A stretch of 64,000 nt of DNA from Octopus bimaculoides (lineage: Eukaryota). Made by a program: the position numbers and the translations under genes. Shown piece by piece: positions 3,076 through 3,469 of this stretch (the stretch's first letter is position 1; each line of letters opens with the position of its first letter). Under the pieces are notes generated by a model that searched no databases, was not told the origin of the DNA, and saw nothing but the letters and a program-made list of their open reading frames with translations. Location: assembly GCF_001194135.2 (NCBI RefSeq), contig NC_069006.1:22652277-22716276 (forward strand), read 5' to 3'.

Positions 3076-3079
<4 letters not shown>

Positions 3080-3469
3080 ACCCCTCGGGGTCAGCCACAT
3101 TTAAGTGGCAAATATACTTCACTTTATCGTGCAGTTACTGTTAATACCTCGTTCAGAGATTTAACATTGCTTGTTTTCAGTTTTTCAATATCAGTGAATA
3201 ATTTCACTGGAAAAACTTATATATATTTGCCAAGGGATGCCTTTTGCATCGAAGGTCTGCGATTGTCGTACGCTGAAGAAGGGAAATAACCCTGAAACTC
3301 GAGTACGTACGTATCGTAGACCAAGATGGGAAGGATAACTTCCCTTGGCAAATACAGACAGGACACAGAAGTGTGTTGATAGCCAGCTGGAGGAGATGTC
3401 CTCCTGGGGCTAAAAGCAACAGTAACATCCACCCCTCGGGGTCAGCCACATTTAAGTGGCAAATATACT
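3076..3469 (+). mobile_element. Retrozyme / Penelope-like non-autonomous element: 351-bp unit plus at least 43 bp of terminal direct repeat
   Basis: atccacccctcggggtcagccacatttaagtggcaaatatact occurs at 3076-3118 and 3427-3469 (the latter runs into an N gap). The unit contains a hammerhead ribozyme, has no ORF, and is embedded in (TA)n. Confidence 0.75.
3254..3322 (+). ncRNA. Minimal type-I hammerhead ribozyme
   Basis: Stem I cgtacg (3267-3272)/cgtacg (3306-3311), extended by ggtctgcgat (3254-3263)/atcgtagacc (3313-3322). Core CTGAAGA (3273-3279); stem II AGGG-aaataa-CCCT; GAAAC-tcga-GTA cleavage triplet (3303-3305). The palindrome ACTCGAGT spans helix III. Confidence 0.88.

What the first reader, a model, noticed from the sequence alone, without database searches (positions are those of the whole stretch)
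3076..3469. Retrozyme-like element with a complete, apparently intact hammerhead ribozyme
Seen in sequence: every conserved core base of a type-I hammerhead is present (CUGAAGA, stem II AGGG/CCCU, GAAAC...GUA). Stem I is 6 bp plus a bulge plus 10 bp (one G-U). Helix III is a 1-bp stub inside the palindrome ACUCGAGU. A further perfect 14-bp helix encloses the ribozyme (3224-3237/3341-3354), and other hairpins fill the unit. The unit is 351 bp, ORF-less, has at least 43 bp of terminal direct redundancy and sits in (TA)n. Established knowledge: minimal hammerheads with palindromic loop III that cleave as dimers are typical of Penelope-like elements and of metazoan non-LTR retrozymes, which give rise to small circular RNAs. 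Inference: this is a slightly-more-than-unit-length copy made from a circular or multimeric RNA, a candidate self-cleaving circRNA system in a cephalopod. Whether it is already described I cannot check.
Basis: partly seen in the sequence, partly recalled or inferred. Interest (0 to 1): 0.9.

Follow-up and report, generated by a model that had tools for sequence, protein, structure and literature searches.

The report
Octopus hammerhead-ribozyme retroelement (retrozyme) copy
This is a genuine copy of a small non-coding mobile element in the Octopus bimaculoides genome that carries an intact-looking self-cleaving hammerhead ribozyme; elements of this kind (retrozymes) are already known in many animals, so it adds a member rather than a new kind.

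Summary
A 351-bp ORF-less unit (3076-3426) is followed by an exact repeat of its first 43 nt (3427-3469), then an assembly gap, with (TA)n on both sides. It encodes a complete type-I hammerhead (3254-3322, cleavage after 3305).

The motif is not chance. A descriptor found it but nothing in 300 random 59-kb sequences. A covariance model trained only on known type-I hammerheads scores it 28.8 bits (E~4e-6). Rfam's own models miss it.

The window is Octopus bimaculoides. I found two relatives:
- A circularly permuted copy on another chromosome (locus L124, 82-85% identical).
- A diverged 5'-truncated copy at window 1703-1928 (minus strand), with an inverted partial duplicate at 1954-2091.

Between the first two copies, 7 of 24 hammerhead pairs changed on both sides and still pair. 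Two of these keep helix III an 8-nt palindrome. The predicted minimum-energy fold of two ribozyme domains is the classical double hammerhead.

The anatomy fits a metazoan non-LTR retrozyme mobilised by Penelope-like machinery: (TA)n targets, a 43-nt tail, an inverted truncated copy and an apparently shared 3' end. This locus holds one ribozyme and is probably a dead-end insertion. The kind has been known since 2014-2020, including in molluscs. Cleavage, circles and copy number remain untested.

The parts
3041..3077 (.). (TA)18.5 microsatellite, left flank / target
   Evidence: TRF; sequence
3076..3426 (+). One complete 351-bp retrozyme unit (copy A), GC 42.5%, no meaningful ORF
   Evidence: Direct repeat spacing 351; composition and ORFs; fold z -9.1; homologous to L124 11899-12234 in permuted order
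3427..3469 (+). 43-nt exact repeat of unit positions 1-43 (terminal redundancy or 'tail'). It ends at ...AAATATACT, probably within a few nt of the true 3' end.
   Evidence: Diverged copy C ends at the equivalent point directly against (AT)n.
3470..3541 (.). Assembly gap (72 N). Probably hides only (AT)n rather than further units (inference).
   Evidence: right contig starts with (AT)n; position of copy C's 3' end
3542..3600 (.). (AT)29.5 microsatellite, right flank
   Evidence: TRF
3254..3322 (+). Type-I hammerhead domain with extended helix I: distal helix I 3254-3263/3313-3322, internal loop UGU 3264-3266 / U 3312, proximal helix I 3267-3272/3306-3311
   Evidence: R2 97.7 bits; covariation with L124 copy
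3273..3279 (+). Core CUGAAGA (C3-A9)
   Evidence: aligned to CUGAnGA of R1
3280..3293 (+). Helix II AGGG/CCCU (A10.1-U11.1 closing pair) with 6-nt loop AAAUAA
   Evidence: identical in L124 copy; G-C to A-U change in copy C
3294..3305 (+). GAA, then the 8-nt palindrome ACUCGAGU (helix III, 1-bp stub as monomer, 8 bp between two copies), then A17. Predicted cleavage is between 3305 and 3306.
   Evidence: cofold minimum-energy structure is a double hammerhead; palindrome kept as AUCCGGAU in L124
3224..3237 (+). 5' arm of the perfect 14-bp helix enclosing the ribozyme domain (partner 3341-3354)
3341..3354 (+). 3' arm of the 14-bp helix
1703..1928 (-). Copy C: a diverged (~50% identical), 5'-truncated relative. 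It covers the hammerhead to the 3' end and terminates against (AT)n 1674-1702. Its hammerhead at 1857-1921 has the same architecture, with C.A at 10.1/11.1 and one A.A mismatch.
   Evidence: nhmmer E 1.6e-6; R1 15.6 bits; R2 17.5 bits; alignment
1954..2091 (+). Copy C': inverted duplicate of the 5' 138 nt of copy C (93% complementary, 25-nt spacer)
   Evidence: nhmmer

Best explanation
Copy A (3076-3469) is a slightly-more-than-unit-length insertion of a non-autonomous, hammerhead-bearing retroelement. It is a metazoan non-LTR retrozyme family of Octopus bimaculoides, sitting in a (TA)n microsatellite.

Proposed life cycle:
1. Master loci with two or more tandem units are transcribed.
2. Two ribozyme domains pair through the palindrome ACUCGAGU into a double hammerhead and cut after GUA (3305).
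3. This releases 351-nt monomers with 5'-OH and 2',3'-cyclic phosphate ends.
4. A host tRNA ligase (RtcB type) closes them into highly base-paired circles.
5. A Penelope-like element's GIY-YIG endonuclease and reverse transcriptase nick (TA)n DNA.
6. They copy the circle or multimer from a preferred start near ...AAAUAUACU, possibly primed by TA/AU microhomology.
7. The resulting insertions share a 3' end, have variable 5' ends, and are often longer than one unit.

Shown here in silico:
- the intact motif
- its statistical significance
- three related copies at different loci and phases
- compensatory covariation
- (TA)n flanks
- one copy whose 3' end abuts (AT)n at the position where copy A's readable sequence stops
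- the predicted dimer fold

Inferred from the literature on the family: cleavage, ligation, circular RNA, and the identity of the mobilising enzyme. Copy A holds a single ribozyme, so it is most likely a dead-end product rather than a circle-producing gene.
For: - Motif and significance.
- Architecture: the same 45-nt layout as the RF00163 consensus and the validated mussel Mg353 (GAAAC GCGC GUC) and axolotl Ax353 (GAAAC ACGU GUA) retrozyme ribozymes. Unit sizes are comparable, 353/353/330 versus 351. Cervera & de la Pena describe canonical metazoan HHRs as helix I 6 bp, helix II 4 bp, helix III 1-2 bp with a palindromic loop (PMC4209133).
- Second copy: it lies on chromosome CM046602.1 (L124 11899-12234). 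It runs from about unit position 175 to 351, then 1 to 157, then an N gap. So the junction CAGTAAC|ATCCACC is internal to the element, and more than one unit or a circle was copied.
- A versus L124: 21 of 69 ribozyme-domain columns differ. 14 of these lie in 7 pairs changed on both sides that still pair. They comprise 4 in distal helix I, 1 in proximal helix I and 2 in helix III, which stays a perfect palindrome (AUCCGGAU). Slid-partner controls give 0-1 such pairs.
- Copy C adds further double changes in helix I and a G-C to A-U change in helix II. It keeps the 3-nt/1-nt internal loop.
- Cofold of two 69-nt domains: minimum free energy -65.5 kcal/mol, which is the double hammerhead with an 8-bp intermolecular helix III, versus 2 x -29.6. 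As a monomer the active fold (-24.5) loses to a register-slipped fold.
- Penelope-style integration marks:
  - (TA)n at both ends of A and at the 3' end of C.
  - A 43-nt tail, compared with the 30-40 bp tails and (TA)n bias in PMC8557442.
  - An inverted 5'-truncated copy C', compared with the Fig. 2 legend of PMC8557442 and the 'dual HHRs on opposite strands' of PMC4209133.
- Penelope-like RT/EN remnants are present in the sampled octopus DNA.
- Low GC (42.5%), no ORF and strong structure match the family description in PMC7229834.
Against: - No Rfam hammerhead model reports the site even at E<=10. RF00163 does detect metagenomic ribozymes with the same helix III, at 34-35 bits against a threshold of 34.
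- The 10.1-11.1 pair is A-U rather than the usual G-C. From general knowledge of the ribozyme, this may lower activity.
- Only one complete ribozyme is visible at this locus. No tandem array with two or more ribozymes was seen anywhere, because the relevant ends fall in assembly gaps.
- The L124 copy has U4 changed to C in the core and is probably inactive.
- Copy number is unknown. My extra loci were chosen through a mariner family that itself sits next to (TA)n, so the sampling is biased.
- No autonomous Penelope-like element with a related terminus was found.
- No RNA evidence of any kind is available.
Confidence: 0.75

Rival explanations
1. The copies are 5'-truncated 3' ends (pseudo-LTR fragments) of an autonomous Penelope-like element, not a separate non-autonomous retrozyme family.
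For: - The insertion has Penelope-style hallmarks: a (TA)n target, a 43-nt tail, an inverted truncated copy, and variable 5' ends (PMC8557442).
- Penelope-like RT/EN remnants occur in the sampled loci.
- In Xenopus, retrozymes are sister to pseudo-LTRs of such elements (bioRxiv 10.64898/2026.07.22.740005).
Against: - The L124 copy continues past the 3'-end position straight into a second round of the same 351-nt unit, with no ORF.
- The ribozyme is the canonical type with 6-bp/4-bp helices. In corals that type marks retrozymes, while Penelope-like elements carry minimal variants (PMC7229834).
- The unit shows no similarity to the 3' UTR of the Penelope-like remnant in L122.
Confidence: 0.13
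2. It is a DNA-level tandem or satellite repeat, collapsed by the assembler, that merely retains a fossil hammerhead. No RNA circle or retrotransposition is involved.
For: - Both A and the L124 copy run into assembly gaps.
- Historically, such ribozymes were first seen in satellite DNA (PMC7229834).
Against: - Copies are dispersed on two chromosomes in unrelated flanks and different phases.
- A and C lie in one 2-kb stretch on opposite strands and are only about 50% identical.
- One copy ends at (AT)n at the same unit position where copy A's sequence stops at the gap.
- The substitutions are strongly biased toward pair-preserving double changes, which implies selection on RNA structure in the lineage of the source copies.
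Confidence: 0.07
3. The hammerhead-like motif is a chance match in AT-rich, palindrome-rich DNA.
For: - Rfam models do not report it.
- Weaker hammerhead-like matches also occur nearby (4504-4572).
Against: - 0 hits in 300 random sequences.
- E about 4e-6 with an independent model.
- A homologous copy elsewhere preserves all 24 pairs but two, through 7 double changes.
Confidence: 0.01

Closest known systems
Metazoan non-LTR retrozymes (Cervera & de la Pena 2020, NAR, PMC7229834), e.g. mussel Mg353 and axolotl Ax353
   Same: - Unit of about 350 bp, low GC, no ORF, no LTR/PBS/PPT, and a highly structured RNA.
- One type-I hammerhead per unit with an 8-nt palindromic helix III (mussel ACGCGCGU, axolotl ACACGUGU, octopus ACUCGAGU).
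- Predicted to act as a dimer.
- Monomeric or slightly-more-than-unit copies are common.
   Different: - No sequence similarity outside the ribozyme.
- The closing pair of helix II is A-U rather than G-C.
- A very long helix I (6 bp + loop + 10 bp).
- No long tandem array has yet been seen.
- Not described for cephalopods in the papers I could search.
Rfam RF00163 Hammerhead_1 (type I; Schistosoma/newt-type)
   Same: Identical 45-nt layout: 6-bp helix I, CUGAnGA, 4-bp helix II with a 6-nt A-rich loop (CAAAUA versus AAAUAA), GAAA, an 8-nt palindrome, H17, and helix I.
   Different: The octopus sequence scores below reporting level with the Rfam model. Helix I and helix II sequences are entirely different.
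Minimal hammerheads of Penelope-like elements (Cervera & de la Pena 2014, PMC4209133; Lunse et al. 2017, the latter known to me only through citations in the papers read)
   Same: - Type I, with a palindromic or absent helix III and a dimer requirement.
- Located in elements that insert as partial tandems, or inverted copies, in microsatellites.
   Different: - Those have a long helix II (7-8 bp), a short helix I (4-5 bp) and an unpaired base 5' of helix II, and they sit in pseudo-LTRs flanking an RT/EN ORF.
- The octopus ribozyme has canonical 6-bp/4-bp helices and no ORF.
Plant LTR retrozymes (Cervera et al. 2016, PMC4918200)
   Same: Non-autonomous retroelements thought to spread through hammerhead-processed circular RNAs.
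   Different: Plant elements use type-III hammerheads inside LTRs, with PBS and PPT, unit sizes of 600-1000 nt and GC above 55%. None of these features applies here.

Membership tests
Hammerhead ribozyme, type I (canonical metazoan) | All conserved core nucleotides: C3 U4 G5 A6 N7 G8 A9, G12 A13 A14, A15.1-U16.1, H17 not G | tested here: met
   CUGAAGA 3273-3279, GAA 3294-3296, A3297-U3304, A3305; aligned without a non-canonical pair to R1
Hammerhead ribozyme, type I (canonical metazoan) | Three helices with open helix I: helix I about 6 bp, helix II about 4 bp, helix III 1-2 bp capped by a short palindromic loop (PMC4209133) | tested here: met
   6 bp / 4 bp / 1 bp + UCGA within the palindrome ACUCGAGU; same layout as the RF00163 consensus
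Hammerhead ribozyme, type I (canonical metazoan) | Helices supported by covariation among homologues | tested here: met
   7 of 24 pairs changed on both sides between A and L124, against 0-1 in slid controls; further changes in copy C. Only 3 sequences, and C was aligned with a structure-aware model.
Hammerhead ribozyme, type I (canonical metazoan) | Score at or above the Rfam RF00163 gathering threshold (34 bits) | tested here: not met
   No hit at gathering or at E<=10. The model does detect L014 and L003 with the same helix III at 34.9 and 34.3 bits, so it is narrow. The independent model R1 gives 28.8 bits, E about 4e-6.
Hammerhead ribozyme, type I (canonical metazoan) | Site-specific self-cleavage | not testable with these tools
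   Only a thermodynamic prediction: the dimer minimum-energy structure is the double hammerhead
Metazoan non-LTR retrozyme | Short (150-450 bp) ORF-less unit of low GC carrying one type-I hammerhead, without LTR/PBS/PPT | tested here: met
   351 bp, GC 42.5%, no ORF with homologues
Metazoan non-LTR retrozyme | Head-to-tail tandem arrangement (dimers to multimers) | tested here: inconclusive
   A = 1.12 units. The L124 copy crosses the unit junction and covers at least 0.94 unit in another phase. Both run into assembly gaps, and no locus with two ribozymes was seen.
Metazoan non-LTR retrozyme | Multiple dispersed genomic copies | tested here: met
   Three independent insertions in about 127 kb of non-N O. 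bimaculoides DNA, on two chromosomes. Sampling was biased, so no copy number can be given.
Metazoan non-LTR retrozyme | Co-occurrence with Penelope-like elements in the genome | tested here: met
   RT/EN remnants at L122 3187-3953, L124 3476-3709 and window 46195-46328; also stated for cephalopods in PMC8557442
Metazoan non-LTR retrozyme | Expression as linear and circular RNA of unit length | not testable with these tools
   No transcriptome access
Autonomous Penelope-like element | ORF with telomerase-like RT and GIY-YIG endonuclease between pseudo-LTRs | tested here: not met
   No ORF in the unit; no RT/EN signal within or next to copies A, B or C

The most novel reading that the evidence does not exclude
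An active, Rfam-invisible hammerhead retrozyme family exists in octopods. Its insertions all end at the same ...AAAUAUACU site next to (TA)n. This would point to priming of reverse transcription on a circular RNA by TA/AU microhomology with the nicked microsatellite. The so far hypothetical integration step of animal retrozymes would then become directly testable. It would also imply that cephalopod hammerheads are undercounted by standard annotation.
Probability: 0.3. Interest if true: 0.55.

Novelty: new member of a known kind. Interest (0 to 1): 0.35.

Why it matters
- It extends hammerhead-bearing retrozymes to a cephalopod. No such description turned up in the literature I could search; the giant squid genome paper only lists 235 Rfam hammerhead_1 hits.
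- Standard Rfam annotation misses this ribozyme clade.
- It supplies a compact natural data set of three copies. The palindromic helix III is preserved by double compensatory changes, which is direct comparative support for the dimeric 'double hammerhead' mode of action.
- The apparently shared 3' end next to (TA)n, together with the tail and the inverted truncated copy, ties retrozyme integration to Penelope-type machinery more concretely than co-occurrence statistics do.
- None of this overturns current views. A specialist would find it expected.

Tried and rejected
1. Rfam cmscan was run on the whole window at gathering threshold, on 3000-3470 at E<=10, and on 3245-3335 at E<=10. It gave no hammerhead hit. 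A control on metagenomic loci shows RF00163 only just reaches threshold even for close matches.
2. I searched the protein collection with a chimera of all stop-free stretches of the circular unit, hoping to find spurious ORF calls on other copies. Nothing was found.
3. Exact-pattern scans with the family-specific ribozyme pattern returned 0 in viral contigs, metagenome contigs and genome contigs, and a 29-nt unit-specific pattern returned 0 in viral contigs.
4. A generic metagenome scan for CTGANGA...GAAACTCGAGTH returned 120 loci. They include real hammerhead families, some Penelope-associated in coral-type contigs, but no relative of the octopus unit.
5. A protein search with a coral-metagenome Penelope-like RT returned thousands of unnamed hits. 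None could be assigned to octopus, so the autonomous partner was not identified.
6. There is no sequence similarity to validated coral, mussel or axolotl retrozymes outside the ribozyme.
7. I first dismissed the pattern hits at 1872-1902 and 1980-2010 as a coincidence inside an inverted repeat. A profile search later showed that the left arm is a diverged homologue of the unit, so that rejection was withdrawn.
8. RNAalifold on a plain MAFFT alignment of A, B and C did not recover helix I, because C is shifted by 2 nt in helix III. The structure-aware alignment was used instead.

Full report
**What is in the sequence**

The window comes from Octopus bimaculoides (GCA_001194135.2, chromosome CM046626.1, near 22.65 Mb). 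At 3076-3426 lies a 351-bp unit. Its first 43 nt recur exactly at 3427-3469, where the sequence runs into a 72-N assembly gap. The element is bracketed by (TA)18.5 at 3041-3077 and (AT)29.5 at 3542-3600.

The unit has 42.5% GC against 37% for the window. It has no stop-free frame longer than 93 codons even when circularised. Its six-frame products have no homologue among 5.8 billion proteins. It folds far better than shuffled controls on both strands (z = -9.1 and -8.9).

The plus strand encodes a full type-I hammerhead.
- distal helix I 3254-3263/3313-3322 (10 bp, one G-U)
- internal loop UGU/U
- proximal helix I CGUACG/CGUACG
- core CUGAAGA
- helix II AGGG-AAAUAA-CCCU
- GAA
- the palindrome ACUCGAGU
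- A17 at 3305

The enclosing perfect 14-bp helix 3224-3237/3341-3354 is also there.

**Is it more than chance?**

A descriptor search for type-I hammerheads finds 3267-3311 in the window. It finds nothing in 300 random 59-kb sequences of the same dinucleotide statistics.

I built a covariance model (R1) from seven known type-I hammerheads, none of them from octopus:
- four experimentally validated retrozyme ribozymes from the supplement of PMC7229834
- two metagenomic ribozymes that pass Rfam's threshold
- the RF00163 consensus

R1 scores the site at 28.8 bits, E about 4e-6, full length and with no non-canonical pair. The runner-up in the window scores 15.6 bits.

Rfam's own models do not report the site at all, even at E<=10 on 91 nt. 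A control shows why this is not fatal. RF00163 has exactly the same 45-nt layout, including an 8-nt palindrome for helix III. Yet it only just reaches its 34-bit threshold on metagenomic ribozymes that share GAAACUCGAGU (34.9 and 34.3 bits). The octopus ribozyme differs from the consensus throughout helices I and II, including an A-U rather than G-C closing pair of helix II.

**Related copies**

No second copy of the unit is visible by BLAST in the window. The public DNA collections gave no match to the family-specific pattern.

I therefore sampled more octopus DNA through homologues of the neighbouring mariner transposase.

*Copy B.* One locus, L124 (O. bimaculoides chromosome CM046602.1), contains a clear homologue. 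L124 11923-12234 aligns to window 3264-3426 and then continues without a break into 3076-3232, at 85% identity, before hitting a 632-N gap. The junction ...CAGTAAC|ATCCACC... is therefore an internal feature of the element, and the two insertions start in different phases of the same circle or multimer.

*Copy C.* A profile of A and B then detected a third, much more diverged relative inside the window itself. It lies at 1703-1928 on the minus strand (E 1.6e-6; about 50% identity). It begins at the hammerhead. It ends within a few nucleotides of the position equivalent to 3469, directly against (AT)n at 1674-1702. Its first 138 nt are duplicated in inverted orientation at 1954-2091 (93% complementary).

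No copy was found in L122, L123, L125 (O. vulgaris), L126 or L127.

**Covariation**

Between A and B, 21 of the 69 columns of the ribozyme domain differ.
- Fourteen of these fall in seven base pairs that changed on both sides and still pair: four in distal helix I, one in proximal helix I, and two in helix III.
- One more is G-C to G-U.
- Two pairs are broken.
- Two changes lie in the core (N7, and U4 to C).

Sliding the 3' partners by 1-3 columns gives 0-1 double changes and 25-37% pairing, against 95.8% observed.

The helix III changes turn ACUCGAGU into AUCCGGAU, which is again a perfect 8-nt palindrome. This argues that the intermolecular 8-bp helix is the selected structure, not the 1-bp stub.

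Copy C, aligned with a structure-aware model, adds double changes at five of the six proximal helix I pairs and a G-C to A-U change in helix II. It keeps a 3-nt/1-nt internal loop after six pairs and a palindromic helix III (ACAUGU). Several hairpins outside the ribozyme are also conserved, with a few compensatory changes.

The sample is small (three sequences), and C's alignment leans on the model. Even so, the A-B comparison alone is convincing.

**How it probably works**

RNAcofold of two 69-nt domains gives the classical double hammerhead as the minimum-energy structure (-65.5 kcal/mol). Two monomers give 2 x -29.6. A lone monomer prefers a register-slipped helix that buries the cleavage site (-29.6) over the active fold (-24.5).

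This matches what is documented for amphibian retrozymes with a single-pair helix III and palindromic tetraloop. Those cleave poorly as monomers and well as dimers (PMC7229834; PMC4209133).

The surrounding anatomy points to Penelope-type integration:
- insertion into (TA)n
- a 43-nt terminal redundancy, comparable to the 30-40-bp 'tail'
- an inverted 5'-truncated partial copy
- variable 5' ends
- an apparently shared 3' end

All of these are described for Penelope-like elements (PMC8557442; PMC4209133). Remnants of Penelope-like RT and GIY-YIG domains occur in the sampled octopus DNA. [quoted passage not shown]

The 3' end at ...AAAUAUACU next to (TA)n suggests priming by microhomology. That is my inference.

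Copy C ends at the equivalent of 3469 against (AT)n, and the contig after the gap starts with (AT)n. I therefore expect the 72-N gap to hide microsatellite rather than more units. Copy A would then be 394 bp with one ribozyme, a product rather than a source of circles. Such monomer derivatives are common in vertebrate retrozyme families.

**Comparison with known systems and novelty**

The element meets the sequence-level definition of a metazoan non-LTR retrozyme. The ribozyme meets that of the canonical metazoan type-I hammerhead. It is not the 'minimal' Penelope variant, which has a long helix II and a short helix I.

It shares no sequence with validated coral, mussel or axolotl retrozymes beyond the ribozyme.

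I found no paper describing retrozymes or hammerheads in octopus. The giant squid genome paper merely lists 235 Rfam hammerhead_1 matches (PMC6962438).

The finding is thus a new member of a known kind. It is a good catch and correctly interpreted, but not surprising to a specialist. What remains open is entirely experimental or genome-wide: cleavage, circles, copy number, array structure and the autonomous partner.

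Noticed in passing
window 4504-4572 (- strand): This is another hammerhead-like motif: GGUG CUGAAGA AGGAG-CAACAA-CUCUU GAAA UAUGCAUA UA CACC. It has all core bases, a 10-nt palindromic helix III, a 4-bp helix I and the same UGU 5' bulge. It scores 18.3 bits with R2 (E about 0.1) and passes my relaxed descriptor (0 hits in 300 random sequences). 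It has no wider homology to the unit, and it lies inside ORF 4403-4729, which has no significant Pfam match. It could be a decayed relative or a chance match.
   Followed up: partly
window 2094-3040 (+); L125 9283-10596: A Tc1/mariner element lies here, with TIR CAGGGTGGGGAAGCAAAATTTACAA (full length about 1.3 kb in O. vulgaris). The window copy keeps a 278-aa DDE_3 ORF (2076-2912) but lacks its 5' 365 bp, which are replaced by the inverted retrozyme-like pair C/C'. Its 3' TIR abuts the (TA)n that received copy A. Copies of this family in other loci are also followed by TA-rich microsatellite. That probably explains why a retrozyme copy lies downstream of a mariner copy in two of the seven loci examined (the window and L124).
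   Followed up: partly
window 4080-4460: Two tandem copies of a ~210-bp repeat (88-89% identical). A related sequence lies at L124 5229-5371, so it is a dispersed repeat family of unknown type.
   Followed up: no
window 46195-46328 (- strand); L122 3187-3953 (-); L124 3476-3709 (+): Degenerate fragments of Penelope-like RT and GIY-YIG endonuclease domains. The L122 fragment's 3' UTR shows no hammerhead and runs into TA-rich microsatellite and a gap, which could fit the hammerhead-less Naiad clade reported as old remnants in cephalopods.
   Followed up: partly
L045 (OFEP01001482.1) and many Ga0126336/38/43 and OFE* contigs: Metagenome contigs, probably from a cnidarian host, carry Penelope-like elements with RT + GIY-YIG ORFs. 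They are flanked by minimal hammerheads of the form CUGAUGA-UCGCUUCGUGCGU-GAAACUCGAGUA, sometimes as inverted pairs. Other contigs (L014, L071/L074/L089/L101) carry canonical type-I hammerheads with the same ACUCGAGU palindrome. L014 has two copies 662 nt apart.
   Followed up: partly
L126, L127 (ENA ERZ22157276, contigs of 0.85 and 1.2 Mb): An assembly filed as a metagenome contains the same mariner family at about 82% nucleotide identity and octopus-like GC (36-38%). It is probably host DNA of another cephalopod.
   Followed up: no
window 27859-29346 (+): A 495-aa ORF with multiple C2H2 zinc fingers (Pfam E 7.6e-21).
   Followed up: no
window, whole: Sixteen N gaps totalling 4,939 bases. Several adjoin microsatellites, so repeat structure near gaps (including the finding) is under-resolved in this assembly.
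   Followed up: no
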